Part shown: positions 29,222 through 64,000 of the stretch, piece after piece | Layout: each line of letters starts with the position of its first letter | Numbering within the stretch: the stretch's first letter is position 1 | Virus record (IMG/VR): IMGVR_UViG_3300029893_000001 | Span: 310,001 to 374,000 of that record | Reading direction: 5' to 3' (one strand) | Length of the DNA stretch: 64,000 nucleotides | Notes under the pieces: generated by a model | Seen by the model: only the letters and a program-made list of their open reading frames with translations | The model's database searches: none | Told to the model about the DNA's origin: nothing | Translations under genes and position numbers: made by a program

Positions 29222-30250
29222 TCATGCCGTGAAACCCGGAATTGGCTTGAGGTTTGATTGATGACGGCCGAACGAATCGACCCTCATTTGATGAAACGTC
29301 TCGATCAGATTCTCTTTCGACCAGTTTGGTCGAGAGAGGGGGTCTCTTACAATCAAACGCTTCACGAACTTGCACATGGGATCTGGAGTCGACGCTGGAA
29401 CCTTGAGAGCTGACACCCCGTCGTAACTACCGGTGAGACAATACAACATGGTCTTACCCAGGCTGTACAAGTCTGTCTCCGGAATTGGAGGCTTCCCGTC
29501 CACCATCTCCGGGGCCGAAAATAATTCGGTGTATCCCTTGGCTGCCGTCTTCCCGGTAGGACGAATGGCTGCCAGTCCGAAATCGACCAACACGGCGAGA
29601 TGCTTGTGTGGCTGCACGATGACGTTCTTCGGCTTCAAATCTCCGTGCACGACGCCGTGTTGGTGAAGGTATAACAGTCCGTTCAAGAGACGCTGGGTGA
29701 TCCATGCCACATTCTCTGGGTCCAAGCGTCCAGCCTTGTCAACGACCTCCTCCAGCGTTGGACCCTCAACATAGGACATGACGAGGATGATGCTCCCATC
29801 ATCATGGCGAATGACATCCCTCATGGCAGGCAGTGCGTAGTGCCTCATGTCCCAAAGCGCACGAGCCTCGTCCATGAGGATAGCCTCTGATTCTGGGCCT
29901 GTCATGAAGCCCTGCTTAAGGCAGGCCGGATGCTTGAGGATGAGGTGCTCAGCTTTGTATGTAGCGCCAAAGCCGCCCTCTGCGATCTTCTCGACAACAC
30001 GATAGTTGCCAATAATCGTGCCTTTCTTCGCGAGCTTCTCGAAGCGGGCGCGCTTTTGGGCGCTTACAAGGATACTGTGAGCCTCATTGATTTCCTTGGC
30101 CATGGTGTCGTCACCCCCTGACCGATCAGGATGGTACTTCACCAGCAAGGCCTTCTTGGCAGCGTCAAGAACTTCTCGCGACGCATTCACGGAGACCTGA
30201 AGGATGTCGGCCAACTCACGGAGAGTCTCCGCCTTTTCAACCAAACCCAT
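29222..30250 (-). CDS. J-domain fused Hanks-type Ser/Thr protein kinase
   Basis: KYHPDR (J domain), EGGFGATY, HGDLKPKN, DFG, APE, DLYSLG. Confidence 0.92.
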   Translation of the reverse strand: MGLVEKAETLRELADILQVSVNASREVLDAAKKALLVKYHPDRSGGDDTMAKEINEAHSILVSAQKRARFEKLAKKGTIIGNYRVVEKIAEGGFGATYKAEHLILKHPACLKQGFMTGPESEAILMDEARALWDMRHYALPAMRDVIRHDDGSIILVMSYVEGPTLEEVVDKAGRLDPENVAWITQRLLNGLLYLHQHGVVHGDLKPKNVIVQPHKHLAVLVDFGLAAIRPTGKTAAKGYTELFSAPEMVDGKPPIPETDLYSLGKTMLYCLTGSYDGVSALKVPASTPDPMCKFVKRLIVRDPLSRPNWSKENLIETFHQMRVDSFGRHQSNLKPIPGFTA

Positions 30251-49946: not shown

Positions 49947-50204
49947 TCAGTGGCAGGACACCCAGAATCCGGGCCGGACCATGACGGCCCGATTGACCCG
50001 GCGGGTGACGTGCGCCCCGTACCGATTGCACGCGGCCTGCGTTTCGGCGAGGAGCGCATCCCCGCTCGACGCTTCCGAGCGGGGCGTCGAGGAATACTCG
50101 ACGCGGGCCGGCGTCGTCGCGCCGCAGCCCGAGGCGAGCAGCACGATGCAGACGAGCAGGAGCGAGAAGAGGCCAGCGCCGAGAGCCTTGATTTCGTCCA
50201 TCAT
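49947..50204 (-). CDS. small putative lipoprotein
   Basis: Hydrophobic signal ending LLASGC; promoter motif at 50228 and GGAGG. Confidence 0.65.
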   Translation of the reverse strand: MMDEIKALGAGLFSLLLVCIVLLASGCGATTPARVEYSSTPRSEASSGDALLAETQAACNRYGAHVTRRVNRAVMVRPGFWVSCH

Positions 50205-50309
50205 TATTCGGTCCTCCCTTGTGCCGACTAGTATCGGGTGGGTTCGCTCCTCTTAAATGGAGAAGCCCCCGGGCATCCGCCCGGGGGCTATTCCCTTGTT
50301 GCCCGGAAA

Positions 50310-50786
50310 TCAGCCGGGCAACAAATCGTTCAGCTCGTCGAGGAAATCGTCGACCTCCCCGTCCGAAGCCTCCGCGGGATCCGGGGTCGGCTCGGGAGCC
50401 GGAGCGGGGGCCGGCGCCGCCTTCGGAGTCGCCTTCGGTGCGGCCGGAGGCGCCACCGGAGCCGCTCCGCCGAGGCTCGACAGATCCAGATCGTCGATCC
50501 CCAGGGACAGCGCCGGAGCGCTGGCCGGCGGAGGGGTGGGCGCAGCCTTCGGAGCCTCGGGAGCCTTCGCGGCGCCCTTGCCCTTGCCCTTCGGACAGCC
50601 CCGGGCGTTGTGCCCCTGCTCGCCGCAGGTGCCGCAGGTGTAGGTCGGGGCCGGAGCCGCCATCACCGCCGCCGTGGCCAGCGTCGAGATGGGAACGACC
50701 GCGAAGCCCATCGCGCTCAGCGCCCGCACCACCTTGCCGAACTGCTCGTCGGTCATCTTGTCGGTCATCTTCTTGCTCATGATCAT
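50310..50786 (-). CDS. CCHC zinc-knuckle protein with Pro/Ala linker and acidic tail
   Basis: CGTCGEQGHNARGC; tail DGEVDDFLDELNDLLPG; promoter motif at 50823. Confidence 0.75.
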   Translation of the reverse strand: MIMSKKMTDKMTDEQFGKVVRALSAMGFAVVPISTLATAAVMAAPAPTYTCGTCGEQGHNARGCPKGKGKGAAKAPEAPKAAPTPPPASAPALSLGIDDLDLSSLGGAAPVAPPAAPKATPKAAPAPAPAPEPTPDPAEASDGEVDDFLDELNDLLPG

Positions 50787-50850
50787 GATTCCTTTCCGGC
50801 GAGGCGTCCCTCGCCTCATTTCCTAGTATCGAATGGGTTCGTTTGGCCGA

Positions 50851-50943
50851 CTAGCGCCGCTGACGCTCCGCGTGACGCCGCGCCAACTCGGCGCGGGCCT
50901 CCTCGATCGCTAGAATCTCGTCCACGTCCAAACCGTCGTACAT
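50851..50943 (-). CDS. 30-aa peptide MYDGLDVDEILAIEEARAELARRHAERQRR
   Basis: Promoter motif at 50968 and GGAGG upstream; below the ORF-track cutoff. Confidence 0.6.
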   Translation of the reverse strand: MYDGLDVDEILAIEEARAELARRHAERQRR

Positions 50944-51050
50944 GGGGCAAAAACCTCCGTTCGCCGTCTAATATCGGCCGGGTTCGCCCAATTGACATTT
51001 CGAGAGTAGCTTAAACGGGCTTTGGCCCGGGTTTCCCCGGGCCGCCCGCC

Positions 51051-51467
51051 TCACGCCGCCTTCGTACGGGCGGCCAGCTTGGCGGCGACCGCCTTGCTGT
51101 ACGCCGCCGCCTTCTCGTAGACCGCCGCCGCCAGGTGCAGATCGAGCCGGCCGATGCTCGACCCGAGGCACACGTGGCCCTCGGAGGGCACCCCGAGCAC
51201 CAGCTTGTTCCCCTGGCCGCAGATCCACCGCTGGAGACGCTGCCGGTTGCCGCTCGACGCCTTGGCCACGAAGACGTCGTGGACCGCGATGCGCGCCGGG
51301 CCCGGCGTCCCGTCCTCGCCGTGCATCGAGCGGAGCACGATGCCGAAGGACTTCACGCCCTCCCCGGCGGAGCCGACCTGCGCGCCGGTCGCGGCGTCCA
51401 GGTGGAAGACCAGGGCGGGGGCCAGCGGGAGATCGCGGGTGACGTCGTACGTGTTCTTCTTCGCCAT
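51051..51467 (-). CDS. hypothetical cassette protein
   Basis: Promoter motif at 51513, hairpin-TTTAA at 51011-51043. Confidence 0.7.
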   Translation of the reverse strand: MAKKNTYDVTRDLPLAPALVFHLDAATGAQVGSAGEGVKSFGIVLRSMHGEDGTPGPARIAVHDVFVAKASSGNRQRLQRWICGQGNKLVLGVPSEGHVCLGSSIGRLDLHLAAAVYEKAAAYSKAVAAKLAARTKAA

Positions 51468-51538
51468 GATTCACCATTCTTTCTGGGGCGCCGTGCCCCG
51501 TCGTTGTACCGACTAGTATTGTCAGGGTTCGGAAAACT

Positions 51539-51672
51539 TGGCGGAGTCACATCGATGCATGGGTGGAGCCCGTGTCTCTGTGCAAGTGACTCGCTCCCGA
51601 CGAGTATGTCCCTACGTGCAGCTTGCCGGTAACGTAGAGGGAGACCGCCGGGCGGCTATCATTCCTCCGCCA
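51539..51672 (-). ncRNA. candidate structured ncRNA (~135 nt)
   Basis: Directly downstream of the promoter motif at 51677; ends pair (TGGCGGAG/CTCCGCCA); nested stems; no credible ORF. Confidence 0.45.
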
Positions 51673-51743
51673 TTCACTACTATCAGCCGGGTTCAAATCC
51701 CTCTTAAACGCGAGAAGGCCCGGGGCTTTTGCCCCGGGCCCCA

Positions 51744-51941
51744 TCACCCGACCTTCCGAATCGGGGCGACGATGACTCGACTACGCAGCTCGCGCCGCTC
51801 TCGGAGCTTGCGGATCTGCAAATCGAGAAGCGCAATCGTGGCATCGAGCATTTCCCTTTCCTCGGGATCTTGCTCCCTCACACGCTTGCGCAGCGCCTCC
51901 GCTTTCTCACAGAGGAGTGCACGAATGACATGATCGTTCAT
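51744..51941 (-). CDS. hypothetical cassette protein
   Basis: Promoter motif at 51959, GGAGG, hairpin-TTTAA at 51704. Confidence 0.7.
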   Translation of the reverse strand: MNDHVIRALLCEKAEALRKRVREQDPEEREMLDATIALLDLQIRKLRERRELRSRVIVAPIRKVG

Positions 51942-52247
51942 TATTCACCTCCCACCAACTACTATCGAGCGGGTTCAATTGCTATTCGGGAGTAGGGTCA
52001 CGCGGAAATAGGAAAATGCCGACCAATTAATTTTGACCCATAAGTGGTAAAGTATGTAACCGCTCGTTCACACATTCTCACGCTTAAGTACGTATACGCT
52101 CGCAGCCATTGCGAGCTTGCTTGTACCCACTGCGAAATAGCCTAATAAGGCATGTACGCTCGCAGCCATTGCGAGCGGGGCGGGGCGTTAAAAGGCTACG
52201 GGCCCCAGAGGGGCCCTATCTCCTCGCAGCCGTTGCGAGAAATGGTC

Positions 52248-52478
52248 CTAGTAGTCCATCCGTCCGCTCGGAATGGGACCCGAGCCGAGCAGGTAGGCCA
52301 GCGCCTCGACCCACGCCGCTCGTCCAGCGGCCAAGTGAGACCTCAGGACGAAAATGCTTCCCAACGCTCCGACTTGCAGATCGAGAGCAAGTCGAGCCTG
52401 GTGCTCGTGGTAGCGTGCCGAGCCGACCGCTAGAGCAGCACGAGCACACTGATCACCGAAATCTTTCTCCGTGGCCAT
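52248..52478 (-). CDS. hypothetical cassette protein
   Basis: Promoter motif at 52496, GAGGAGG. Confidence 0.65.
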   Translation of the reverse strand: MATEKDFGDQCARAALAVGSARYHEHQARLALDLQVGALGSIFVLRSHLAAGRAAWVEALAYLLGSGPIPSGRMDY

Positions 52479-52569
52479 CGTTGCCTCCTCGCCGATTATT
52501 ATCAGCTGGGTTCAATTCGTGCGCGGTTAAATGCGTAACGGCTGCGAGGAATCTCGCAGCCGCTGCAAA

Positions 52570-52729
52570 CTCCCAAAGGGAAACTGGAATCCGTACTCAA
52601 TCACTTGTCCGACTTCGTTGTCGGGGTGTCTTTCGGGACCACACGATTCCCGCTTCTACGCCGAAGCTCCACGAAAGATCGTATGTTTCCAGCGTCCCTT
52701 TGGGAGCCCGATTTTTCGGTGAATCGGGC
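52570..52729 (-). ncRNA. candidate structured ncRNA (~160 nt)
   Basis: 12-bp plus 6-bp closing stem (52570-52589 / 52687-52706) with internal hairpins, preceded by hairpin 52706-52729. Confidence 0.5.
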
Positions 52730-52756
52730 GAACCGTTCTCGCAGCCGTTGCGAGAA

Positions 52757-53095
52757 TCAGGCGGCCGTGCCGAGCACCTTGCCCATCGACAGGAACCGGC
52801 CCTTCTCCCCGCGGAGCCTCAGGCGCAGATCCCCGCTCTCGTGGGCGTCCCGGATCTTGTCGCCGAGGCTCACCCGCACCCCCGCCTGCTTGCCCTGCTT
52901 CCTCAGGAACTCGCGGGCCTCCTCCGCCTCCTGCTGCTGCGCCTGCTGCCGCTCCTTGAACTGGCGGCGGGACTTGGCCTCGCGCTCCTTCGCCTTGCGC
53001 TCCTCGGAATCCTGCCAGAAGCGGCGCTTCACCTCCGCCGGGTCGAGGCGGCGGGTTCCGGGGACGAGCGTGGTGCGGGTCGCGTTCGTGGTCAT
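52757..53095 (-). CDS. hypothetical cassette protein (charged coiled coil)
   Basis: Promoter motif at 53131, AGGAGG. Confidence 0.7.
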   Translation of the reverse strand: MTTNATRTTLVPGTRRLDPAEVKRRFWQDSEERKAKEREAKSRRQFKERQQAQQQEAEEAREFLRKQGKQAGVRVSLGDKIRDAHESGDLRLRLRGEKGRFLSMGKVLGTAA

Positions 53096-53220
53096 GATTA
53101 TTCCTCCTGGGCCGGAGCCCGTTGCCCCGACTAGTATCGGCCGGGTTCGGCCGACTAGGGAATTAAACGCGCAACGGCTGCGAGATTTCTCGCAGCCGTT
53201 GCTTGTGTAGAGTCAGTGGG

Positions 53221-53403
53221 TCAGGGGATGCTGACCTTCGCCTCGACCGTCGCGGAGTCGAGATCGATGGCCTCGCGGCACGAATCCACGTCCACGATGT
53301 CATCGTTACCCACGAGCACATCCCACACGAGAGATTCCGCCTGCTGGGGACTCTCGGCCGTGACTTTCACCGTCACGGTCACAGTGAACTCCTGATCTTC
53401 CAT
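53221..53403 (-). CDS. small acidic cassette protein
   Basis: Promoter motif at 53423; cassette flanked by 19-bp direct repeats. Confidence 0.7.
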   Translation of the reverse strand: MEDQEFTVTVTVKVTAESPQQAESLVWDVLVGNDDIVDVDSCREAIDLDSATVEAKVSIP

Positions 53404-53451
53404 TTTGCATTTCCCTCGCTAACTATTATCCGCAGGGTTGCTTGTGTAGAG

Positions 53452-53730
53452 TCAGCCCAGGTCGAAGGGGTACTCCGAAGTGACGTCGCCCCACAGACGA
53501 TCGTCGTCGCCGTAGTAGTGGTGCGTGGCCGTCTCCGGGATCACCGGATTCTCCCGGTCGTCGTTCCTGTAGACACAGAAGCGCTCCCCCGGGCAGCAGT
53601 CGCCCAGGAAAAGCATTCCCGCTCCCATCAGGACGATCGTCTCGGCCGGCGTTCCCTGCGGGGCCACGAAATGCACCACGGTGACGTCGCGGTCGCTTTC
53701 GTAGCGCACGGAGTAGTCGTTGACGTTCAT
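53452..53730 (-). CDS. hypothetical cassette protein
   Basis: Promoter motif at 53751, GAGGAGG. Confidence 0.7.
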   Translation of the reverse strand: MNVNDYSVRYESDRDVTVVHFVAPQGTPAETIVLMGAGMLFLGDCCPGERFCVYRNDDRENPVIPETATHHYYGDDDRLWGDVTSEYPFDLG

Positions 53731-53850
53731 TCGGCTTTCCTCCTCAGCGACTATTATCGTCGGGGTTCACGTCCGACACGAAAAGCGCGTTAAATGAAAC
53801 AACGGCTGCGAGAAATCTCGCAGCCGTTGCGTGCCTTGGGAACTTTGGAA

Positions 53851-54195
53851 CTACAGGACCACCCATCCCCAGAAGACGGCCCAGGCGATGAAGCGGATCG
53901 GCCAGCGGGTCCAGGAGTCATTCTGCCAGAGGCAGAGCAAAATCCAAGTGACCCCGAACGCCGGCCAGAGCGTATTGAACCACGGGATCACCTGGACGAT
54001 TCCGCACCAGATCCAGTACGTCAGCAGGAAGCACGTGGAAATGTTGCAGAAGAACTCCACCCAATCCGAGATTTCCATCTCGTTGTGCGGGGTGTAGATC
54101 GTCCGGCCCGTCTCGTGGTCCCTGTAGACCTTGTACGTGGCGCGGAGCGGGCGGATGCTCGGCTGGAGCCGGCGGATATTCTTCGGGTTGGGCAT
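53851..54195 (-). CDS. Trp-rich membrane protein
   Basis: Promoter motif at 54214; three hydrophobic segments. Confidence 0.7.
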   Translation of the reverse strand: MPNPKNIRRLQPSIRPLRATYKVYRDHETGRTIYTPHNEMEISDWVEFFCNISTCFLLTYWIWCGIVQVIPWFNTLWPAFGVTWILLCLWQNDSWTRWPIRFIAWAVFWGWVVL

Positions 54196-54290
54196 GGGTC
54201 GTCTCCTCGCTGACTATTATCAACAGGGTTCTCGCAGCCGTTGCGAGAAATTAAAGTAAGATGGCCCCGGGTTTCCCCGAGGCCCTCTTT

Positions 54291-54677
54291 TCATCCGAGC
54301 GGCTGACTGAGAGCCACCGCACGGCGTCGAGCGTGGATCGGATTGCTCTTCCAGAAGCGAGCCCAGAAATCGCGCTCCGCTTGCTTCGCCTCGTGCTCAT
54401 TCCTGTACTGCAATTGAACGAGCAGATCGGCGTATTCCCCATCCCACTTGGGGTCGTACTCCAGCGACTCACGAACGAGCTGGAATCCCTCCGTTTCGAC
54501 GACCGCCTCGGCCCGGAGCGCCCGGAGTCGGTACGGGACGAATCGGAGGAGCGCCTCCCGATAGTCAGCGTCGTTTGTGATGAATCGGCTCGCCTGTCGG
54601 AGCCAGTCGGCAGCCGACTGTTGCTCTTTCATGACTCGCCGATACAGCACCTCGGAGAACGGGATGATTTCTGCCAT
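54291..54677 (-). CDS. hypothetical cassette protein
   Basis: Promoter motif at 54696, GGGAGG. Confidence 0.7.
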   Translation of the reverse strand: MAEIIPFSEVLYRRVMKEQQSAADWLRQASRFITNDADYREALLRFVPYRLRALRAEAVVETEGFQLVRESLEYDPKWDGEYADLLVQLQYRNEHEAKQAERDFWARFWKSNPIHARRRAVALSQPLG

Positions 54678-54759
54678 TCAACCTCCCTTCGCCGATTATT
54701 ATCAGCAGGGTTCTGTGCGGCCGTGAATGTCCTTAAAGCACGAAAAGGCCCTTGCTAGG

Positions 54760-54915
54760 GCCCTTTCGCGGGTCATTTCGGCAAAAGCTGACCAGGCTCG
54801 GAATACCAAGGCACGTGGTCGTGTACCTTGGTTAGCCTTGCCCCTTTTCGAGTCCATTATTGGTGGCTCGCCTTACGGGTGGGAGGGTGCAGCCCGGATG
54901 GAAACGGAACGAGAA
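54760..54915 (-). ncRNA. candidate ncRNA cassette (~160 nt)
   Basis: Between the promoter motif at 54922 and hairpin-TTTAA at 54733; no SD-led ORF; 10-bp stem ACCAAGGTAC/GTGCCTTGGT and others. Confidence 0.45.
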
Positions 54916-54958
54916 CACCATTTAGTATCGCCAGGGTTCTCGCAGCGGCTGCGAATCC

Positions 54959-55159
54959 CTAAATCCCGATCCAGTAGTTGTCCAGGTCGCTCAGCTTCAC
55001 GCTGGTGATCTCGGGATTGTGGTCCGGCAGACGTTGCTTGGCGAGTCGACGGACGTGAACATCGAACTCCTTTTTGTCCCTCGTTCGCGTCAGGACCGTG
55101 AATCTGTCCACCGCCGACTTCCCGTCGACTTCGTAGCACAGTTCGATGAGATACTTCAT
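54959..55159 (-). CDS. hypothetical cassette protein
   Basis: Promoter motif at 55178, GAGGAGG. Confidence 0.7.
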   Translation of the reverse strand: MKYLIELCYEVDGKSAVDRFTVLTRTRDKKEFDVHVRRLAKQRLPDHNPEITSVKLSDLDNYWIGI

Positions 55160-55247
55160 TTTCCGCCTCCTCGCCGAATATTATTGGCAGGGTTCTCGCA
55201 GTGACGGCGAGAATTTAAATTGAGAAAGGCCCCTCGCGGGGCCCGTC

Positions 55248-55466
55248 TCAGTCGTCGCGGAGGCACGGGGTCGGTCCCCCGCAGAATCCGCAGCGCCCCG
55301 GATTGTGGTACGCTGAGAGCACGTGATTGTTGGCCACGTGCTCCGGCTCGAAATAGTCTTCGGTTTCCCGAACTTCCATTCCTTCCGGGGCTTGCTCGTC
55401 GTCGAGGAGACGCACGGCTCGTGCCGTGGTCTTGCCGGGGTTGGCAATGTAGTAGCGGATGGTCAT
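55248..55466 (-). CDS. hypothetical protein, probably leaderless
   Basis: ATG lies 7 nt after GATAAT of the promoter motif at 55472; no SD. Confidence 0.6.
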   Translation of the reverse strand: MTIRYYIANPGKTTARAVRLLDDEQAPEGMEVRETEDYFEPEHVANNHVLSAYHNPGRCGFCGGPTPCLRDD

Positions 55467-55491
55467 GCCGAATATTATCGGCAGGGTTGAA

Positions 55492-55564
55492 TCGGACCGG
55501 TGGGATTCGAACCCACAACGTCCCGGTTATGAGCCGGGGGCTCTAACCATTGAGCTACGGTCCG
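55492..55564 (-). tRNA. tRNA with CAT anticodon (Ile2 or elongator Met; not initiator)
   Basis: CGGACCG TAGCTCAATGGTTAGAGC C CCCGG CTCATAA CCGGG ACGTT GTGGG TTCGAAT CCCAC CGGTCCG A; paired 1-72; no encoded CCA. Confidence 0.93.
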
Positions 55565-55921
55565 ATGGTTTTCACTAGGTTACGTTTCGCGTTACTTTGT
55601 GCGAACGATTCAGGCCCAGATCCCAGGCGCCGAATCCGGTTGCTCCGGGATCGGGATGTATTGGTTTCCCACGAATCCCGCCGCCGCGTCCAAGGCGACC
55701 ACACGGGGGAATGTCACCGCAGGGTGCGGCTCATCCTCCCAATAGGCTTCCCACGCAGCCAGAGCGAGATACTGCAAGAGCAGTTTTTCCATTATTCACC
55801 TCCTCGCCGTATCCATACGGGCTTGCACCACTTTTCTCAATGACACGAGGCCTTGGGTCGCTGTCTTCCCACAAACGTATGGGTGCAACCCATACGTTTT
55901 CGCCTTTGGTGTACACGAGAA

Positions 55922-56380
55922 TCAACCTTGGACAAATTGATCGGGTGTTCCGCAGTTCCACACCCTCAAGGGTGTGCCCCAACGGGTCGGCTCCTCGGTC
56001 CAGTCGAAGTGGATCCGGCGGGAGTTCCCCTTCCGAATCCAGAACTTCCCCCTCGCATCCTGAGGCCGACTCCACACGTCGGCCGAGACGTTCATCGAGT
56101 CCAGGAGATCGTTGACGATTCCGTGGAAATCCACCCAATCCTGCCACTCCAGAAAGCGAGCCTTCGGCTTCTTGCGGGGCGGGAAAGTGACGACGCACTC
56201 TCCGGGGTGATTCCCGCAGTATTCCTTCGCGGTCACGAGGCGGACGCGCTTCAGAAGGATCGTCTGGCCATCGACGCACGATTCCACGTTGAAGCGACCG
56301 TCGGCCCGCACCTTCTTTTGAAGGGCTACGTGGATTCGCTCGACGTCGCTGCCGTCGAGCACCTTGATTGAGTACGGCAT
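55922..56380 (-). CDS. hypothetical cassette protein
   Basis: Promoter motif at 56413, GGAGG. Confidence 0.72.
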   Translation of the reverse strand: MPYSIKVLDGSDVERIHVALQKKVRADGRFNVESCVDGQTILLKRVRLVTAKEYCGNHPGECVVTFPPRKKPKARFLEWQDWVDFHGIVNDLLDSMNVSADVWSRPQDARGKFWIRKGNSRRIHFDWTEEPTRWGTPLRVWNCGTPDQFVQG

Positions 56381-56491
56381 GATTATTCCTCCGTGGGTTG
56401 GTCCAGCGAGCTTTAGTATCGGGAGGGTTCTCGCCGTGGCTGCGAGAATTAAACTGGAAACGGGCCCCGGGAAAACCCCGGAGCCCGTTTT

Positions 56492-56854
56492 CTAGAACTC
56501 GCCCTCGTCGTCGTCCACCGCGTCGAGTGCGTCTGGACGTCCGAGGCCGCCGTCGGGCCCATGAGGGTGGTACCTCTTTTCCTTGTGGATGTCCAGAAAG
56601 AAGAGCGCCTCTTGCAGCGAACGCACCCTCTTTGGATTCTTCGTCCGCACCATTTTTGGGTTCGTCAGGGAATCCTTCGAGACCCACTCCTCGACGAGAA
56701 AGAAAACCTCCGGGCACCCATCGAGAGGAGCCGAGGGCCCGGTAATATTCTCGATGACGGTCGAGATTCGGCCTCGCTCGTCCGAGAAAATCACCGTGGT
56801 CGGCTCGAAATCGGTGAGCTTTTCGATGATTTCACTGTAGGTGAACTTTCGCAT
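56492..56854 (-). CDS. hypothetical protein
   Basis: AAGGGA SD, followed by hairpin-TTTAA at 56449. Confidence 0.65.
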   Translation of the reverse strand: MRKFTYSEIIEKLTDFEPTTVIFSDERGRISTVIENITGPSAPLDGCPEVFFLVEEWVSKDSLTNPKMVRTKNPKRVRSLQEALFFLDIHKEKRYHPHGPDGGLGRPDALDAVDDDEGEF

Positions 56855-57030
56855 TTGTTCCCTTCTACCGACGGTATCGGTACTCCTCGTCCACCTCTTG
56901 CTGCGTGGGCTCCCTTCCGAGCCTCTTGCGCAGATCGTCGCGGGCCGCGTTCCACTTGCGCTCGTCCTCCGCCCTTTCGAGAGCGCAGGCCGAGCATCCC
57001 ATCATCATGCACATGGTCGCCTCCCTCTGA

Positions 57031-57245
57031 GAGCGAGGCTCGGAGCCGGAATCCGAGATTAGTCTGTTTTCGCCTCTTGGCCTAGCTCCGCCTCCGTGCC
57101 TAAACCTACACGGCCAGCCTCTACACTAGGTTGCAGACGAATCCAGGGTCTAGCCGCTTTTGCCTTGGATGACTAGTCCTCGGCGCTTGCACCCACGGGG
57201 GCGTCACCCCTTGGGGTATCTGGATTCCGGCTCCGAGCCTCGCTC
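57031..57245 (-). ncRNA. candidate structured ncRNA (~215 nt) with 24-bp closing stem
   Basis: Perfect inverted repeat 57031-57054 / 57222-57245 just downstream of the promoter motif at 57260; internal hairpins; no ORF. Confidence 0.7.
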
Positions 57246-57351
57246 CTCGCCGTCGTGGTCTACTATCAGGAGGGTTCAACTCCTCTAATTAAACAGAGAA
57301 AGGGGCCTGTGGCCCTTCTCCCTGTTTTGGAATCTCGCAGTGGCGGCGAGT

Positions 57352-57990
57352 CTAGTAGGCCCGGCTCACCACCGGAAGCCCACGCAGTTCCTCGACTATT
57401 CCCTTGAAGGCGACCTCGACCTCGCCGGTGTCGGGCAGCTCGACCGTGCGATCGATTCCGTAGAGATCCTCCAGGAACTCCCGGAATCCAGGCGTGTCGC
57501 CGCGGAACGGCTTGTTGAGAAGCCACTCCGCGAACTCTTCTCGGCGATTCCAATCCAGATCCTTGGCGACCTGCGTACCGATTGCCACCCCGAGGATACA
57601 ATATCCTCGGACATCCCAACGATCGATGAACGACCTCGCGCTGCTGTCGCTCGAAAAGACTCGACACGAGTAGTGCACGTGCCAGTAGCCCCACTTCGCC
57701 GCCGGCTCGCTCTCCCTCACGTCGTCCATGGAGGCGTAGGAACCCATTTCCGGGCCCCACCCATCCGACGACGGCATCGCCCTGACGAACGTATGGGCAC
57801 TGTCGTAGCGATTTCGGATGAAGCTGCCGTCCGGCATCTTGAAGGCGTTGATCTGGTGGCAGTGCGGGTGCTTGAGATCCTCCTCCAGCGACTGCTTTGC
57901 GCTCTCGACGCTGCGCTCGCAAAAGAACCTCCACGAGAGCACCGCGCTGATGAGCCGCTGCCAGACCTTGTGAGAAATCTTGTTGTTCAT
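57352..57990 (-). CDS. hypothetical cassette protein
   Basis: GAGGAGG SD; partial promoter motif at 58013. Confidence 0.7.
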   Translation of the reverse strand: MNNKISHKVWQRLISAVLSWRFFCERSVESAKQSLEEDLKHPHCHQINAFKMPDGSFIRNRYDSAHTFVRAMPSSDGWGPEMGSYASMDDVRESEPAAKWGYWHVHYSCRVFSSDSSARSFIDRWDVRGYCILGVAIGTQVAKDLDWNRREEFAEWLLNKPFRGDTPGFREFLEDLYGIDRTVELPDTGEVEVAFKGIVEELRGLPVVSRAY

Positions 57991-58279
57991 TGTTCTGCCC
58001 TCCTCGCTCTAACTATTATCGTCGTCGACTACGATCCGATGCTCCCCATTCGCGGCGCATGCTGAATCACGTAGGAGACGCCGGTCAAAACCCAGCCAGC
58101 GGGAGTGTGGCCGTAGATGTTCACGCAGAACGTGAACACCAACACGGCGACGATGACGTACCACCTCTTGAGGGTTTCCACGATTGATTGACCTCCTCTC
58201 GCCGAACTATTATCGACGGGGTTCGCCGTCATATCGAGAACGACGAAATGCCCTCCGGGACTTACCGGAGGGCATTTCG

Positions 58280-58555
58280 TCAGGATTCCACGATCTTGCC
58301 GGCGTCGAGATCCACGAAACCGATGTGGACGTACTTCCAGCCCGTGCTTCCAATGAGCGTGGGCGAATCCGGGAGACGCTCCGGAGCCTCGGCGAACGTG
58401 CAGCCCTCTCCGACGAGCAGGAACGCCAAGTGGCCGAATCCAGAGGAATCCACCGCCGCGTTTTGGTAGGCTGCCCAGCGAGTTCGCTCGCGCTGTCGAG
58501 CGCGCATTTGGCTCAGGACTTCCTCGTCGATTTGGAGATCATTGGTCGTCATCAT
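58280..58555 (-). CDS. hypothetical protein
   Basis: Coupled downstream of the 58561-58932 gene. Confidence 0.65.
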   Translation of the reverse strand: MMTTNDLQIDEEVLSQMRARQRERTRWAAYQNAAVDSSGFGHLAFLLVGEGCTFAEAPERLPDSPTLIGSTGWKYVHIGFVDLDAGKIVES

Positions 58556-58560
58556 GTCCC

Positions 58561-58932
58561 TCAGTACAGGTTCACGTAGACGCTATCGCCCACGATTTCC
58601 ATCGCGTCCCGGACCTTTTGGGCCGCGTTCATTTCCTCGACTTCGCAGCGATCCCACGTCGCTCTCTGGTCGAGCACGTCGCGGAGAGCAGCCGGCGTGA
58701 CGAGCACCACTTCGGTGTCGCCCCAGGTGAACGCGTTGGTGATGAGTTCCGAGACGATCTCGTATTCCTCTTCGGAGAGGAACTCCGAGAGCGTGATGAA
58801 CTGGCACTCGAAAAGCGTCGGTCGCTTCATGGCCTCCTTTCGGTCGCAGTCTTCGCAGTTGCCTGGACCGCGAAACTCGAAGACAGTCGGACTGATTTCC
58901 TGGCCACACGTCTTGCAATGATATTCGGCCAT
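58561..58932 (-). CDS. hypothetical zinc-finger-containing protein
   Basis: Start MAEYHCKTCG after GAGGAG; promoter motif at 58950. Confidence 0.68.
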   Translation of the reverse strand: MAEYHCKTCGQEISPTVFEFRGPGNCEDCDRKEAMKRPTLFECQFITLSEFLSEEEYEIVSELITNAFTWGDTEVVLVTPAALRDVLDQRATWDRCEVEEMNAAQKVRDAMEIVGDSVYVNLY

Positions 58933-59020
58933 GTTTTTCTCCTCGCCTATTATTATCGACGGGGTTCGTGGTAACGACAAACGCAGAATAGGCCCCGAGT
59001 TTCCCCGGAGCCTATCTCTC

Positions 59021-59395
59021 TCACTTGTTCCTGAAGTACGTCTCGTACCCGATGTCCTTGGTGGACATCAGATTGTGCTTGAGATTCATGGACTCGCCGC
59101 TGAGCATGCGGCGCATTTCCTTCTCGCTGACGAAATCCACCCACTTCTCGTCGTGTTCGGGCCGAATCATGTGGTAGTTCTCGGGGTGAGAGCCCGTCGA
59201 ATCGTAGTCGGTCCACTTCATGATCTGTTGCGTGGTCCATCCGACCGCCGGCATTCCGGTCATGTCGTAGCACCCGCGATTGACCAATTCGGTGGCCACC
59301 ACTTCGTGCCCTTCGATGACCAGCTTGACGATCGGCCAGTCCTCGGGATCGAGAACGTTGTCGCTGAGTCGGGCGTAGAGAATCGGCTTTCGCAT
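59021..59395 (-). CDS. hypothetical protein
   Basis: GAGGAGG immediately after hairpin-TTTAA at 59408. Confidence 0.7.
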   Translation of the reverse strand: MRKPILYARLSDNVLDPEDWPIVKLVIEGHEVVATELVNRGCYDMTGMPAVGWTTQQIMKWTDYDSTGSHPENYHMIRPEHDEKWVDFVSEKEMRRMLSGESMNLKHNLMSTKDIGYETYFRNK

Positions 59396-59440
59396 CTTAC
59401 CTCCTCGTTAAACGCGAAAAGGCCCCTTTCGGGGCCTCTG

Positions 59441-59833
59441 CTATTCCTCGGGAGCAAGTAGCAGCATGGTTTCGGCGGCGTGAGTCAGCGCACCCCACTG
59501 GAGTGCTTCCTCCTCGCACACCGCCTTGTACGCGCGTTGAAGTACACGCAGAAGCACACGCTGCTCGAATTGAATCCGAGCCTCGCCGATCATTTCGTCG
59601 AGGGGCGGGCCCTCGTCGTTGTAGTAGGCGATGCACGCCGGCTTCATCTGCGGGAACGTCTCGCAGTACAGCCAGTCGAGCACGCTCTTGTATTCGTCTT
59701 CCCTCGGAGGGGCGATCTTTCGCAGCGCCTTGGCGTGTTTGCTCGTGCGGAGCCACGCCTCGACCTCCGGGAAGAGGCTCGACGTGAGAGGCCCTCGAAC
59801 GACGCAAACGCACACCATCTGGAGAGCACTCAT
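59441..59833 (-). CDS. hypothetical protein
   Basis: GAGGAGG SD just downstream of tRNA-Glu. Confidence 0.68.
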   Translation of the reverse strand: MSALQMVCVCVVRGPLTSSLFPEVEAWLRTSKHAKALRKIAPPREDEYKSVLDWLYCETFPQMKPACIAYYNDEGPPLDEMIGEARIQFEQRVLLRVLQRAYKAVCEEEALQWGALTHAAETMLLLAPEE

Positions 59834-59859
59834 TATTCACCTCCTCGCCATTATTGAAT

Positions 59860-59932
59860 TGACCCCAACGGGATTTGAACCCGTGTTCTCGCCGTGAAAG
59901 GGCGGCGTCCTAGGCCACTAGACGATGGGGCC
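59860..59932 (-). tRNA. tRNA-Glu(TTC)
   Basis: GGCCCCA TCGTCTAGTGGCCTAGGAC G CCGCC CTTTCAC GGCGA GAAC ACGGG TTCAAAT CCCGT TGGGGTC A; promoter motif at 59946; no encoded CCA. Confidence 0.95.
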
Positions 59933-60210
59933 GTGTCCTCGCCGATTACTATCGGCGGGGTTCACTTCTTTCCGTGGGTGGACTCCCACCATTTCAGATA
60001 CTCGTAATCCTTTCGGTCGAGCATCCGATAATAGGACTCGGGGTCCGCGTCGAGTTGGTATTCATTCTCAGCGGCGTTTTGGTCGACGCCAGGAAATGTC
60101 TCCTCGTACCTGACTCGTCGATTTTTCTTACGCTGTTTCTGCTGTCGTCGCCGTCGCATGGGATATTATTCCTCGGGTTAACGCCGAATAGGCCCCGAAA
60201 GGCCATCGGC

Positions 60211-60408
60211 AGAAGCGAATCGCAGTGGGGAGGCCTACAGAGGCGGATAAAGGCAAACCAATACCCGGAACCCTCGGTTCCGACGGGATTCGAACCCGCA
60301 TCACCGCCGCACCTGGTGCCACAGGACGCCCACTAGACAGCTCCGCGTTGGCACTCACGGAACGTTCATCGTAGGTCCCTGTAAGCCGCCCCACTGCGAT
60401 TCGCTTCT
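60211..60408 (-). ncRNA. candidate ncRNA (198 nt) with permuted tRNA-like (YrlA-type) module and kissing loops
   Basis: 20-bp perfect inverted repeat 60211-60230 / 60389-60408 extended by 11 bp; T arm GCGGG-TTCGAAT-CCCGT, loop-closed acceptor CGGAACC-GAG-GGTTCCG, D-like arm; followed by hairpin-TTAA at 60178. Confidence 0.72.
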
Positions 60409-60419
60409 TGGTTATTGTT

Positions 60420-61170
60420 TCCGCAGATTCAGTTTCCTCCGCCCTGCGCTGCGGCTCAATCTGAGTGACCATGAGAAGGGAGTGCAGTATTCGTTAGCCT
60501 CGTTGGAGATAGTGTGCCCTTTGACTGCCGAGGGTGCAATAGCAATCTGCACCTAAACATAGGCCCGGCAATCTACAGACGATAGTCCAGCGAAGCACCG
60601 AACAATGCGTGTAACCTACGCGATGGTCAAACAATCGAGATGAGTACGAAAGGGAGTTAATTGGCGAGTCAAGGCGTCCTCCTAACGAGACTCTTTTGGG
60701 CCAGCTTTCGCTTTTAAGTGGCGTGGAGGTACGACACAATCTGCAACGTCCAGTAGCAGAAGCCCTGCCCTTGTACTCAGAACATTATCCAGCATATGCT
60801 GGAAGCGAATGGCTATGTTCCTTCGCCACCCGTTCCCCTTGAGCCGCCTTTAGCGGACGCTCATTGGTCCTATCGGAAGCCTAGGCACATCTTGCCCAAG
60901 ATTCCAATAGTATCAATTCAATCTCCGAGCGGTCCAGCCAGGGGGACCGATCCCTGCCACGAACTTAGCGGCGGCGCGTCATTCGTGGCTATATAGTCTC
61001 GAAGTGGTTACGACTCTTGCCCGACAAGTGTCGCAGCAATCAACTGGTCCAGGGGAAGGATTCAGTTGAGTAGGTATGCTTAGTTGCTTCTTGGCGGGTT
61101 TCCTACTAAACCCAGCCAGTCATAAGCTGTAGAACAGGAGAATCATTTCCAGTCCTCCGGCTGTGGGATT
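60420..61170 (-). ncRNA. candidate large structured ncRNA (~750 nt)
   Basis: No credible ORF in an otherwise gene-dense region; dense hairpins and long-range stems; strand inferred from neighbours. Confidence 0.5.
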
Positions 61171-61205
61171 CATTAAACGCGAAGAGGGGCCCGAAGGCCC
61201 CTCTT

Positions 61206-61760
61206 CTATGCGTCCACCATCGCCCGACGGCTCCAGTAGAGGATTGCCTTGGCGAAATCCTCCGCCGAATAGGTGGCCGGCGTTCCTCCGGGGAGACCCA
61301 GGAAGTTGCGGGCCATCGCCATCGGAGTCTGGGGCTCCGGCTCCTCGGTGGGGCGGGCGTTGATCGAGACGATCTCCCACTCGCATTCCGTCGAGGCGTC
61401 GTTGCCGAGAACGTCGTGCCTGTAGAGCACGATCTCGACGACCTTCGCGGGAGCCTTCTCGCCCTTCGCACGCACCTCGATGTAGGGCTCCTCGCCCTCT
61501 CGCCGCGCCGAGAACGTCGCCCGGAGCGTCGTCTTCGGAGTGACCTCGATGACGCCACACTTGAAGTAGTGCGCCTGACTCTCGGTCATCGGGATGAGCA
61601 GAACGCCGTCGCGGTAGCCCGGCTTCGCCTCGGAGAACTGCTGCTCGACGAAAGCGATGAGCACATCCCACTTCGCATCGTGGGTGGCGATGAAGTGTGA
61701 GAAGGGGCTCTCCGGCGTCTGGCGACGCACGAAGTCATTGATTCCGATGAGGTTACCCAT
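61206..61760 (-). CDS. DUF3228-like protein
   Basis: INDFVRRQ, PGYRDGV, FSARREGEEP, IVLY, WEIVSIN, PMAMARNFLGLPGG; promoter motif at 61792. Confidence 0.72.
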   Translation of the reverse strand: MGNLIGINDFVRRQTPESPFSHFIATHDAKWDVLIAFVEQQFSEAKPGYRDGVLLIPMTESQAHYFKCGVIEVTPKTTLRATFSARREGEEPYIEVRAKGEKAPAKVVEIVLYRHDVLGNDASTECEWEIVSINARPTEEPEPQTPMAMARNFLGLPGGTPATYSAEDFAKAILYWSRRAMVDA

Positions 61761-61807
61761 GATTGATTCGGCCTCCCTTTGCCTCGCCAAACTACTATCG
61801 ATTGGGT

Positions 61808-62020
61808 TCAGTCCCTCTCGATCGCGGAGAAGTCTCCCAGGTTCCACGTGGTGTGAGTGGGCTGCATGATGCCGAGAACCTGAGTTCCGTAGTTCTTCTC
61901 GTAATCCCAGGTGTTGAAGTCGCCCCGCGACTGAGCGTAGGCAGCGATGACAGCCTCTCGTGGAGAGCACGAAAACGTCTGCTCGTGGCAGGTGGCGAGG
62001 TTGAGGACAGTGGTGAACAT
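61808..62020 (-). CDS. hypothetical protein
   Basis: Start MFTTVL after GAGGAGG following hairpin-TTTAA at 62040. Confidence 0.65.
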   Translation of the reverse strand: MFTTVLNLATCHEQTFSCSPREAVIAAYAQSRGDFNTWDYEKNYGTQVLGIMQPTHTTWNLGDFSAIERD

Positions 62021-62072
62021 GATTGATTTCCTCCTCTCATTAAACGCGAGAAGGGGCCCGAAGGCCCCGTTC

Positions 62073-62490
62073 TTAGTGACTCCAGGAGCGACGCACACCC
62101 TTCGAGAGGCGGCGAATCATTCGCTCCTCCTGAGCGATGACCTTCCTGGCGACCGGATTGAAATCGCGCAGGTCATCGCGCGTTGGGTAGATCCGGTCGA
62201 TGTCCAGTCCGAATCCCCTACCGCTGTGATGGCTGAAGAGACTTACATGACCAGGAAAAGCCATCGTCTCGATGTAGTGTCCAATCACGACTGTCGAGAT
62301 CGTGACGTGCCGGGTCTTGCACCACGTGCGGTACTCCGGACGAAAGAGATCCCAGGACTTCGGGATGCGCCGTCCGTACCACCGGATGATCGGCTGCTTG
62401 AAGACGACCTTCGTGACCCTCTGGACCTGACCGTCCTTGTGGGTGATGATCTCGGTGGAGCGCCGGAGAGCGCCGGAGAATGTTGCTCAT
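62073..62490 (-). pseudogene. cassette gene frameshifted by a 10-bp tandem duplication
   Basis: GCGCCGGAGA x2 at 62460-62479; removing one unit gives a single 135-aa ORF joining ATG 62490 to the 62073-62288 frame. Confidence 0.75.
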
Positions 62491-62608
62491 GATTGATTGC
62501 CTCCTCTGATTGATTGCCTCCTCGCTCAACTATTATCGGCGGGGTTCAGCGTTCTCTTAAACGCGAGAAGGGGCCCGAAGGCCCCTCGTACGCAGCTCAC
62601 TTAGTGAG

Positions 62609-63232
62609 CTAGTTGGTCTCCGAAGGAGGCGGCAGGACAGCCGATGGCCTTCGGGGAGACGCCCACTTTTCCGCGGCCTGTTCGATGTTGCCATCCGTCA
62701 GGGTGCCGACTTCCATCCTGATGAAGTGCATCGCCTCATTTCGGTAACGATCTGCTTCGAGCGAATCGCAGAAGACCTCGACGAGATTCTTCGCGTCGGC
62801 CAGACCGAGGCCGTGCATCTCGCGGGCCTTCTTGATGGCGGGGATCTTCCTGCCAGTGTTGTTCGGACCTCCGACCACCGCCATGAACTTCGCGGCGGGA
62901 TCGAGATCCTTGACGGGGAAGGGGCACTGCTTTCCGATGTTGCCTCGGATGCGATCGTTGTCGTACTTGAGGCGACCGTTCTCCTGTCGGAGCGTCGCGA
63001 TCTCTTCGCGCTGAAGAGCCACGGTCTTGTTCATGTGAGACCACTCACAGACCATCGCCGACGCATCGGCGTGGATCGACTCCAAGAGCGACGAGGCGCC
63101 GAGCACCATCGCATAGATGGGCACCAACACCAGGTTGAAGGGCTCGTCCTCGACCTGTTCCTTGAGACGGTCCGCGGCGTCTCGGACCATCGTCGTCAGG
63201 ATCTCCAGGTTCTTCACGAACGTGTCGTACAT
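62609..63232 (-). CDS. protein with ribosomal L7/L12 C-terminal-like domain
   Basis: RKIPAIKKAREMHGLGLADAKNLVE; GGAGG; promoter motif at 63263. Confidence 0.72.
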   Translation of the reverse strand: MYDTFVKNLEILTTMVRDAADRLKEQVEDEPFNLVLVPIYAMVLGASSLLESIHADASAMVCEWSHMNKTVALQREEIATLRQENGRLKYDNDRIRGNIGKQCPFPVKDLDPAAKFMAVVGGPNNTGRKIPAIKKAREMHGLGLADAKNLVEVFCDSLEADRYRNEAMHFIRMEVGTLTDGNIEQAAEKWASPRRPSAVLPPPSETN

Positions 63233-63625
63233 TACCAATTCCTCCGGGCCAGAAGTTGGCACTTAGTATCGCCAGGGTCCAACCCCTTAAGCAAGAAAAG
63301 GGCGGCCCCGAAGGACCGCCAATTCATCGGTACATGTTGGCTTCCTGATGGGAAGCCCAATCGTCGTTGACGATCTCGGCGAGTTTGCGAGCAACCTGCT
63401 CACCGTACTTCGAGATCCACTCTTGGAGTTGTTCCCCCGAGAGCGGCTTGATCTCGTATCCGACCATCGGGTCGGAAGCCGGAAGAGCAGGGAAAACCTG
63501 CGGCGGGTCCGAGAAGGCAAACTTGGTGGGTTGCATCGTCTCGACGACGGTGGCGATCACGAGATATTCCACTCCATCCAGAGTGAACTCGTGCTCCCTT
63601 TCGGGATAGGTGAAGCTCTTGTGAT

Positions 63626-63976
63626 TCACTCGCCCTCCTTCTGGTTGAGCCGACTGAGACACGTCTCGCAGATGATGACTTCGCCACGCGTCATCATGCG
63701 ACCACCGCAGTCTCCCCGCGGATTGTTGTTCCAATTCACGCAGTCATCCAGAGCGTACAGGCCGGTGACTTCGACAACCTCCGGAGAGGCGTCGCGGTGG
63801 TCGTAGATGCCCAGCTCCCACCGACCGTCGGCCATCTTCTGACCGGTGGTGTTGGACCAGTTTTCTCCGACGCACCACGGCTCCGGGAGAAGTTCCTCGA
63901 CCTTCGTCGGATCGTTCGGACAGATGATGAGGCGCTCGTCGAGATTGATCTCCGTTCGATTCGCCACGTCCAGCAT
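63626..63976 (-). CDS. hypothetical protein
   Basis: 116-aa ORF with C-terminal Cys cluster. Confidence 0.55.
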   Translation of the reverse strand: MLDVANRTEINLDERLIICPNDPTKVEELLPEPWCVGENWSNTTGQKMADGRWELGIYDHRDASPEVVEVTGLYALDDCVNWNNNPRGDCGGRMMTRGEVIICETCLSRLNQKEGE

Positions 63977-64000
63977 GGACTTGAGCCACTCCCGAGTCTG

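What the first reader, a model, noticed from the sequence alone, without database searches (positions are those of the whole stretch)
52570..52729. Multi-branched closed-stem RNA between a gene and its terminator
Seen: CTCCCAAAGGGA..CTGGAA pairs with TTCCAG..TCCCTTTGGGAG, enclosing TCTTTCG/CGAAAGA, GCTTC/GAAGC, GGGA/TCCC and CCGAC/GTCGG stems. It is preceded by an 8-bp hairpin and bracketed by operator-like boxes at 52539 and 52736. Inference: a 3'-UTR-derived processed sRNA.
Basis: partly seen in the sequence, partly recalled or inferred. Interest (0 to 1): 0.6.

Follow-up and report, generated by a model that had tools for sequence, protein, structure and literature searches.

The report
Orphan stem-closed 3'UTR element, jumbo phage
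A 137-base stretch whose two ends pair into a 20-bp helix really does sit between a tiny phage gene and its terminator, but only that helix is stronger than chance, nothing like it is found anywhere else, and whether it gives a small RNA is untested.

Summary
The window is part of a 392-kb jumbo-phage record. All genes, tRNAs and 58 copies of a phage promoter motif near the finding lie on the minus strand.

**What is confirmed.** The element at 52570-52706 is real. Its ends form 12 + 6 perfect pairs; on the minus strand this becomes 12 + 7 pairs around one C/U mismatch. An 8-bp hairpin abuts it. A single and a double "box" bracket it. An independent assembly gives the identical sequence.

**What is not.**
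- The 97-nt interior folds no better than shuffles (z -0.08 minus strand, -1.4 plus strand).
- The claimed GGGA/TCCC stem is improbable on both strands, and TCTTTCG/CGAAAGA is weak on the transcribed strand.
- There is no Rfam match, no second copy in the genome, and no relative in viral, metagenome or prokaryote collections. The flanking genes are ORFans, so covariation cannot be tested.

**Context.** The element has no promoter of its own, so it lies in the 3'UTR of the 112-aa ORF, upstream of a double-box terminator-like hairpin.

**Class.** Ten long-range inverted repeats with at least 18 matched bases occur in this genome, against about 0.18 expected. This one is the weakest of them.

**Best reading.** It is a dsRNA processing or stability stem (RNase III type) that may release a small RNA. 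Interest is modest.

The parts
52757..53095 (-). Upstream ORF of 112 aa. It is Arg/Lys/Glu/Gln-rich, has GC3 of 0.97 and ends in TGA at 52757-52759. The element would be its 3'UTR.
   Evidence: ORF list and GC3. JGI gene call. No Pfam or PHROG family. The only match among 5.8 billion proteins is itself.
52738..52754 (-). Single 17-nt box (6-bp palindrome arms around a 5-nt centre), 2 nt after the stop codon. Elsewhere this box sits directly upstream of the promoter motif.
   Evidence: 17 matches in the window against 0.27 expected; the box is confined to window 52099-54955 within the whole 392-kb genome.
52706..52729 (-). 8-bp hairpin (GCCCGATT / AATCGGGC, 8-nt loop) that abuts the closing stem and shares one base with it.
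   Evidence: (I7).
52570..52706 (-). The stem-closed element, 137 nt. P1 is 52570-81 / 52695-706 (12 bp). P2 is 52584-89 / 52687-92 (6 bp; 7 on the minus strand through a G-U pair). The interior is 52590-52686.
   Evidence: Identical in an independent Logan contig. Single copy in the genome.
52537..52566 (-). Double-box hairpin (10-12 bp stem, 4-nt loop), followed on the minus strand by a weak U-tract tail ending in UUUAA (52523-52536). This is the presumed terminator of the upstream transcription unit.
   Evidence: I4. Homologous hairpins at 53171-53202 and 53799-53830 are called terminator-like. This copy has too few T in its tail to pass that scan.
52497..52513 (-). Promoter motif GAACCCAGCTGATAATA of the next cassette. 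It is followed by the SD GGCGAGGAGG (52484-52493) and the ATG at 52476-52478.
   Evidence: 58 copies of the motif, all on the minus strand..
52248..52478 (-). Downstream ORF of 76 aa, an ORFan.

Best explanation
**What it is.** The element is a noncoding insert in the 3'UTR of a 112-aa ORFan, within an array of tiny-gene cassettes of a jumbo phage.

**How it is made.** It is transcribed on the minus strand from the promoter of that ORF at about 53147. The transcript would end at the double-box hairpin at 52537-52566.

**What probably matters.** Its one robust feature is a 20-bp end-to-end helix: 12 bp, one C/U mismatch, then 7 bp. I infer that this helix is the functional part, acting as a double-stranded RNA processing or stability signal of the kind host RNase III cuts in phage T7 early transcripts and in rRNA precursors. 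Cutting would leave the upstream mRNA with a base-paired 3' end and could release the piece of about 100-135 nt.

**Shown.** The sequence, the fold statistics, the strand context and the uniqueness.

**Inferred.** Transcription, cleavage and any function of the released RNA.
For: - The closing helix has pair probability of at least 0.94 on both strands. Whole-element z is -4.75 to -6.8.
- A G-U pair extends P2 on the minus strand only.
- The genome holds 10 long-range inverted repeats with at least 18 matches, against 0.18 expected.
- Most of the others fold clearly better on the minus strand through G-U pairs, for example -81.0 vs -66.7, -53.4 vs -38.1 and -118.7 vs -95.8 kcal/mol. One encloses a tRNA-like domain in minus-strand orientation. 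The class therefore looks like an RNA-level feature.
- All 58 promoter motifs, all gene calls and all 45 tRNA/tmRNA genes are on the minus strand.
- There is no promoter motif between the stop codon and the element.
- The stop-to-terminator distance here is about 190 nt, against 3-31 nt at neighbouring cassettes.
- No ORF is called in the gap by two methods.
- The sequence is identical in an independent assembly.
Against:
- No relatives exist, so there is no covariation.
- All 18 pairs of the two arms are Watson-Crick, which fits DNA-level symmetry as well as RNA.
- The interior is no more structured than shuffles.
- The plus strand gives the better-defined fold.
- An 18-match repeat appears in 7 of 40 simulated genomes.
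- The phage has no RNase III or dsRBD of its own, so a host enzyme must be assumed, and the host is unknown.
- The presumed terminator has a poor U-tract.
Confidence: 0.4

Rival explanations
1. DNA-level inverted repeat with no RNA role: a scar of cassette shuffling, a relic of a small mobile element with terminal inverted repeats, or a protein-bound or cruciform site.
For: - Both arms are perfectly Watson-Crick.
- The interior is unstructured relative to shuffles.
- The element lies in a mosaic, GC-rich island of ORFan cassettes bounded by repeated boxes, promoters and terminators, which invite recombination.
- It follows a box plus 'GAAC' that normally starts a promoter.
Against: - It is single-copy in the genome.
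- The arm sequence gives only single-arm chance hits in 185,579 prokaryote species genomes and in viral contigs.
- No target-site duplication is visible.
- The other long-range repeats of the genome share no sequence with it and show strand-biased G-U pairing typical of RNA.
- There is no GC-skew turn at the site.
Confidence: 0.2
2. Chance inverted repeat in a decayed cassette, with no function at all.
For: - Seven of 40 simulated genomes contain a long-range repeat with at least 18 matches.
- This is the weakest of the real ones.
- The interior z is about 0.
- There is no conservation to appeal to.
Against: - The expected number of exactly-18 matches is 0.12 per genome.
- The repeat falls in one of the few long non-coding gaps.
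- Its arms sit flush against a hairpin on one side and 5 nt from a terminator-like hairpin on the other.
- The class is about 55-fold enriched in this genome.
Confidence: 0.15
3. A trans-acting stable small RNA, which is the reader's sRNA taken in its full sense. One possibility is a Y-RNA-like partner or decoy in a phage that encodes Ro60, YrlA-like RNAs, 44 tRNAs and a tmRNA.
For: - The architecture fits the description of Y RNAs in PMC4201824: a long stem made by the 5' and 3' ends plus a large loop, 80-130 nt.
- The phage has a Ro60 ortholog: TROVE 27.2 bits and vWA_Ro60 53.4 bits, both above cut-off.
- A third stem-closed element with a tRNA-like core lies 7.5 kb away.
- A neighbouring gap (54750-54940) looks like a promoter-plus-terminator unit without an ORF, so noncoding cassettes occur in this array.
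Against: - The element has no GNCGAAN0-1G motif on the minus strand and no T or D arm.
- No Rfam match reaches significance (best E about 0.3).
- It lies about 265 kb from the Ro60 gene. The YrlA-like matches of this phage lie within 1 kb of that gene, as in the published set (within 4 kb).
- It has no promoter of its own.
Confidence: 0.15
4. A plus-strand (antisense) RNA.
For: The plus strand has the lower energy and the better-defined ensemble: -72.6 vs -69.6 kcal/mol, MFE frequency 0.08 vs 0.007, and inner-stem probabilities of at least 0.95.
Against: - None of the 58 phage promoter motifs lies on the plus strand.
- There is no sigma-70-like site on the plus strand here.
- No plus-strand gene lies in the neighbourhood.
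- There is no terminator after it on that strand.
Confidence: 0.05

Closest known systems
RNase III processing stems of phage early transcripts (T7 R sites; lambda N-leader and sib) and the long stems flanking rRNAs. This rests on established knowledge, not on a tool result.
   Same: A helix of about 20 bp with a small internal mismatch, placed between cistrons or in a UTR of a phage transcript. Several such stems are scattered through one phage genome.
   Different: The T7 sites are compact irregular hairpins of about 60 nt. Here the helix closes a 97-nt interior, more like the rRNA case. No cleavage has been shown, the host is unknown, and the phage has no RNase III of its own.
3'UTR-derived small RNAs of bacteria
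   Same: Position after a stop codon and before the terminator of the same transcription unit, with no promoter of its own.
   Different: Those sRNAs normally include the terminator hairpin as their 3' end and carry a conserved seed. Here the structured part ends 5 nt before the terminator-like hairpin, nothing is conserved, and no RNA species has been seen.
Y RNAs / YrlA (Rfam RF02553; PMC4201824)
   Same: A long stem formed by the two ends, a large loop and a size of about 130 nt. The same phage carries Ro60 and two YrlA-like matches.
   Different: No Ro60-binding motif, no tRNA-like arms, not next to the Ro60 gene, and no Rfam score.
Mobile regulatory cassettes of T4-type phages (promoter-early stem-loops in hyperplastic regions). 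This is recalled from memory and was not checked here.
   Same: An array of very small ORFan genes, each flanked by a repeated terminator hairpin and a repeated promoter. The content is mosaic.
   Different: This describes the surroundings, not the element. The motifs are different, and the element is an extra piece inside one junction.
MITE-like elements
   Same: Terminal inverted repeats of 20 nt around a short non-coding interior.
   Different: Single copy, no target duplication, and no other copy in any collection searched.

Membership tests
Any Rfam 15 family | Score at or above the family's gathering threshold | tested here: not met
   One search finds only two tRNAs in the window. In one search the best matches over 52400-52850 are SorY at 17.6 bits (threshold 111) and Ms_IGR-8 at 17.1 bits (threshold 44). 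Both lie on the box hairpin, not on the element.
Y RNA / YrlA | Encoded within about 4 kb of the Ro60 gene, on the same strand | tested here: not met
   Ro60 is at G000 95509-97185(-). The element is at G000 362570-362706: same strand, about 265 kb away. The criterion comes from PMC4201824.
Y RNA / YrlA | GNCGAAN0-1G motif near the 5' end | tested here: not met
   The motif is absent from the minus-strand sequence. One match, GCCGAAG, lies on the plus strand inside the interior, which is expected by chance. This phage's own best YrlA-like match, next to the Ro60 gene, carries GGCGAAUG.
Y RNA / YrlA | tRNA-like T and D arms | tested here: not met
   There is no 7-nt T-loop or GG D-loop. ARAGORN finds nothing here.
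Y RNA / YrlA | Long stem formed by the 5' and 3' ends plus a large loop, 80-130 nt | tested here: met
   A 20-bp closing helix and 137 nt in total. This feature alone is not specific.
3'UTR-derived sRNA | Lies downstream of a stop codon on the coding strand, with no promoter of its own | tested here: met
3'UTR-derived sRNA | A discrete stable RNA species with defined ends | not testable with these tools
3'UTR-derived sRNA | Sequence or pairing conserved in relatives | tested here: inconclusive
   No relative carries the locus. The only other copy is 100% identical.
RNase III substrate | About two turns of dsRNA (about 20 bp) | tested here: met
   12 bp + C/U mismatch + 7 bp on the minus strand.
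RNase III substrate | Cleavage by RNase III | not testable with these tools
   This needs an enzyme assay or an rnc-mutant comparison.
MITE | Multiple copies and a target-site duplication | tested here: not met
Intrinsic terminator (for the double-box hairpin) | GC-rich hairpin followed by a U-tract | tested here: inconclusive
   The stem is strong. The tail has 4 U in the counted window, and this copy is not called by the scan, whereas its two paralogues are.

The most novel reading that the evidence does not exclude
The element is one of a set of stem-closed small RNAs (with 57031-57245, 60211-60408 and several outside the window). A tRNA-rich, Ro60/YrlA-encoding jumbo phage would excise these from its transcripts and use them in trans, for instance as decoys or partners in RNA-repair or anti-defence functions. 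That would make it a previously undescribed phage ncRNA without relatives.
Probability: 0.1. Interest if true: 0.6.

Novelty: new member of a known kind. Interest (0 to 1): 0.3.

Why it matters
If the helix is cut, it would show how an uncultivated jumbo phage shapes the mRNAs of its fast-evolving ORFan cassettes. It would also add a case of small-RNA release from a phage 3'UTR.

On present evidence the element is an orphan structure. Only its end-to-end pairing is significant, so its value is mainly as one of about ten such stems in this genome.

The more informative items are in the surroundings:
- a Ro60 gene with YrlA-like RNAs beside it;
- a distant third tRNA-like, stem-closed RNA;
- a genome-wide phage promoter motif;
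- a local operator-like box.

Tried and rejected
**Known RNA families.** Rfam at gathering and at E up to 10 found nothing.

**tRNA.** ARAGORN found none in the element.

**Coding.**
- The only plus-strand ORF (52531..52722, 63 aa) runs through the box hairpin and did not pass the GC3 filter.
- The frame of the upstream gene stays open for about 50 codons past its TGA. By my own count its GC3 there is about 0.63, against 0.97 in the gene, so read-through coding is rejected.

**Paralogues.** There are none in the 392-kb genome. The element has no similarity to the other stem-closed elements.

**Relatives.**
- Three pattern scans of viral contigs gave chance hits or nothing.
- The search for related loci with the 112-aa protein found none.
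All were chance hits by BLAST, so this search was not exhaustive.
- Two scans of genome contigs gave 0 hits and then 16 single-arm chance hits.
- Four related phage fragments found through DnaB (70-86% aa identity) lack the element and its neighbouring genes.
- Word searches with both flanking proteins found only the proteins themselves.
- The phages collection gave no match by near or distant DNA search.

**Phage RNase III or dsRBD.** Absent.

**Replication origin.** There is no skew turn.

**Own promoter.** The sequence after the single box does not fit the 58-copy motif, and no sigma-70-like site is found.

Full report
**Where the window lies.** The window is bases 310001-374000 of a single 392,328-bp IMG/VR virus record, rated 100% complete by CheckV. 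It is a jumbo phage with DnaB-like and other helicases and a DnaJ-kinase fusion. It carries 44 tRNA genes and a tmRNA. From about 50 kb of the window onward, GC rises from about 52% to 58-66%.

**Gene context.** Codon-position GC and the JGI gene calls agree on the layout of this island. It is a row of very small genes, all on the minus strand. None of the ten nearest has a Pfam or PHROG family.

**The observation.** The quoted sequences are all present.
- The two arms, 52570-52589 and 52687-52706, are 18/20 complementary with 97 nt between them.
- An 8-bp hairpin (52706-52729) touches the element.
- A double box (52537-52566) and a single box (52738-52754) bracket it.
- The whole element folds far better than shuffles on both strands: z -6.8 and -4.75.
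- The 97-nt interior alone does not: z -0.08 on the minus strand and -1.42 on the plus strand.
- Pair probabilities are at least 0.93 for P1, P2 and the CCGAC stem. They are 0.70/0.99 (minus/plus) for GCTTC, 0.24/0.95 for TCTTTCG and 0.20/0.14 for GGGA/TCCC.

The significant feature is therefore the end-to-end helix, not the branching.

**Chance level of the helix.** I scanned the genome for inverted repeats 30-400 nt apart and compared it with 40 simulated genomes that keep local trinucleotide content.
- Repeats with at least 18 matches number 10 in the real genome, against 0.18 per simulated genome.
- Seven of 40 simulations still reach 18, and the finding, at 18, is the weakest real one.
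- An independent Logan assembly from another run is identical over the entire gap, so the element is not an assembly artefact.

**The surroundings, read on the minus strand.** Each little gene is a cassette.
- *Promoter.* A motif with consensus GAACCCTGCCGATAnTA occurs 58 times in the genome, always on the minus strand. It stands before ORFs at variable distance, and once 15 nt before tRNA-Glu.
- *Translation start.* The motif is followed by a strong SD and the ATG.
- *Terminator.* After the stop comes a GC-rich or double-box hairpin with a tail ending in UUUAA.
- *Box.* A 17-nt box occurs 17 times in the window against 0.27 expected. Within the genome it is confined to 52099-54955. In several cassettes it directly abuts the promoter motif at the -35 position. 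That placement, and its constant orientation, fit an operator for a local regulator.

**How this junction differs.** In neighbouring cassettes the stop-to-terminator distance is 3-31 nt. Here it is about 190 nt, made up in this order:
- the stop codon;
- the single box;
- a stretch that begins like the promoter (GAAC) but does not match it;
- the 8-bp hairpin;
- the 137-nt element;
- five bases;
- the double-box hairpin.

With no promoter of its own, the element would be read from the promoter of the 112-aa ORF at about 53147. It is therefore a 3'UTR.

**Which strand.**
- Context says minus.
- The closing helix is slightly better on the minus strand, where a G-U pair turns the 2x2 loop into a single C/U mismatch, giving 12 + 7 bp.
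- The interior is better defined on the plus strand.
- All arm pairs are Watson-Crick, so they carry no strand information.

**A class of such stems.** The same scan found other long closing stems.
- *57031-57245:* a perfect 24-bp stem around 167 nt, lying between a promoter motif and the SD of a 49-aa ORF. Its interior has z -0.5.
- *60211-60408:* a 30-nt stem with 28 matches around a core carrying a perfect tRNA T-arm. The core gives sub-threshold tRNA and YrlA matches.
- *Outside the window:* several more.
- *Strand bias:* most fold markedly better on the minus strand through G-U pairs, which argues that the class acts as RNA.
- *Sequence:* they share none with each other.

**Known families tested.**
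- Rfam gives nothing.
- Because one sister element looked tRNA-like, I tested the Y-RNA idea. The phage does encode a Ro60 ortholog (TROVE 27.2 bits, Ro60 vWA 53.4 bits).
- Two YrlA-like matches lie within 1 kb upstream of that gene on the same strand (31.4 and 26.6 bits, E 0.0012 and 0.029, both below the threshold of 69).
- The finding meets only the generic Y-RNA description in PMC4201824. It lacks the GNCGAAN0-1G motif and the T and D arms, and it lies about 265 kb from the Ro60 gene.
- MITE membership fails on copy number and target duplication.

**Relatives.** None were found; the searches are listed under Tried and rejected. The flanking proteins match only themselves among 5.8 billion sequences. 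Phage fragments related through DnaB lack the whole neighbourhood.

**Verdict.** The multi-branch interior and the processed-sRNA reading are not established.
- Most likely (about 0.4): a 3'UTR double-stranded processing or stability stem cut by a host RNase III-type enzyme, with possible release of a small RNA.
- Rivals, with the confidences given in the rival list: a DNA-level repeat from cassette shuffling, a chance repeat, a trans-acting Y-like or decoy RNA, and a plus-strand RNA.

Interest is modest. The neighbouring observations deserve at least as much attention.

Noticed in passing
window 60211-60408 (minus strand): A 198-nt element closed by a 30-nt stem (28 matched). Its core carries a perfect tRNA T-arm followed by a stem-loop and a GG-loop hairpin, in the T / acceptor-like / D order of YrlA. 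Rfam gives tRNA 19.2 bits (E 0.29) and YrlA 16.3 bits (E 1.6), both below threshold. It folds at -118.7 kcal/mol on the minus strand against -95.8 on the plus strand. It may be a third Y-RNA-like gene, about 273 kb from the Ro60 gene.
   Followed up: partly
G000:C1:95509-97185(-), 97574-97716(-), 97877-98012(-) (outside the window; loci L150, L153): A Ro60 ortholog of 558 aa (TROVE and Ro60 vWA, both above Pfam cut-offs). Two YrlA-like matches lie just upstream on the same strand (31.4 and 26.6 bits, both below the threshold of 69). The first overlaps what ARAGORN calls tRNA-Ile(gat).
   Followed up: partly
window 57031-57245 (minus strand): A perfect 24-bp closing stem around 167 nt. It lies between a promoter motif (about 57276) and the SD/ATG of a 49-aa ORF (56865..57014), so it is a stem-closed 5' leader. 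Its interior is no more stable than shuffles (z -0.5) and it has no Rfam match.
   Followed up: partly
window 54750-54940 (minus strand): A box plus promoter motif, then about 170 nt with no SD and no called gene, then a strong terminator. This is a candidate noncoding, or leaderless 29-codon, transcription unit. Fold z is -2.96 and there is no Rfam match.
   Followed up: partly
window 52099-54955, with weaker copies near 55200, 56430 and 57334: A 17-nt box (palindromic 6-bp arms, 5-nt centre) and 'double boxes' made of its 11-nt half-site in inverted orientation. The boxes are confined to this stretch of the 392-kb genome. Single boxes are always in one orientation and often directly abut the promoter motif. 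This looks like an operator set for a local regulator.
   Followed up: partly
whole genome; in the window e.g. 52497-52513, 53147, 54230, 54712, 59962: A phage promoter-like motif, GAACCCTGCCGATAnTA. It has 58 copies, all on the minus strand, in G000 1-185 kb and 341-392 kb. It is absent from viral contigs when searched together with this region's SD.
   Followed up: partly
G000 89-181 kb and 306-370 kb: 44 tRNA genes and a tmRNA, all on the minus strand. They include a CTA-anticodon (amber-reading) tRNA at 105653-105726. TAG is used as a stop by several small genes near the finding. I did not check whether TAG is recoded elsewhere.
   Followed up: no
window about 50000-64000: A GC-rich island (58-66% against about 52%) of ORFan mini-genes with very uneven GC3 (0.64 to 0.97). 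This suggests mosaic acquisition. Related phage fragments lack these genes.
   Followed up: partly
G000 2985-3099, 125467-125639, 128391-128460, 309544-309698: Further long closing stems (21-26 matched bases, except 16 of 18 at 309544-309698). All fold better on the minus strand. One lies in the tRNA region and one in a 5' leader.
   Followed up: no
window 29222-30250 (minus strand): An ORF that combines a DnaJ domain with a Ser/Thr protein kinase domain.
   Followed up: no
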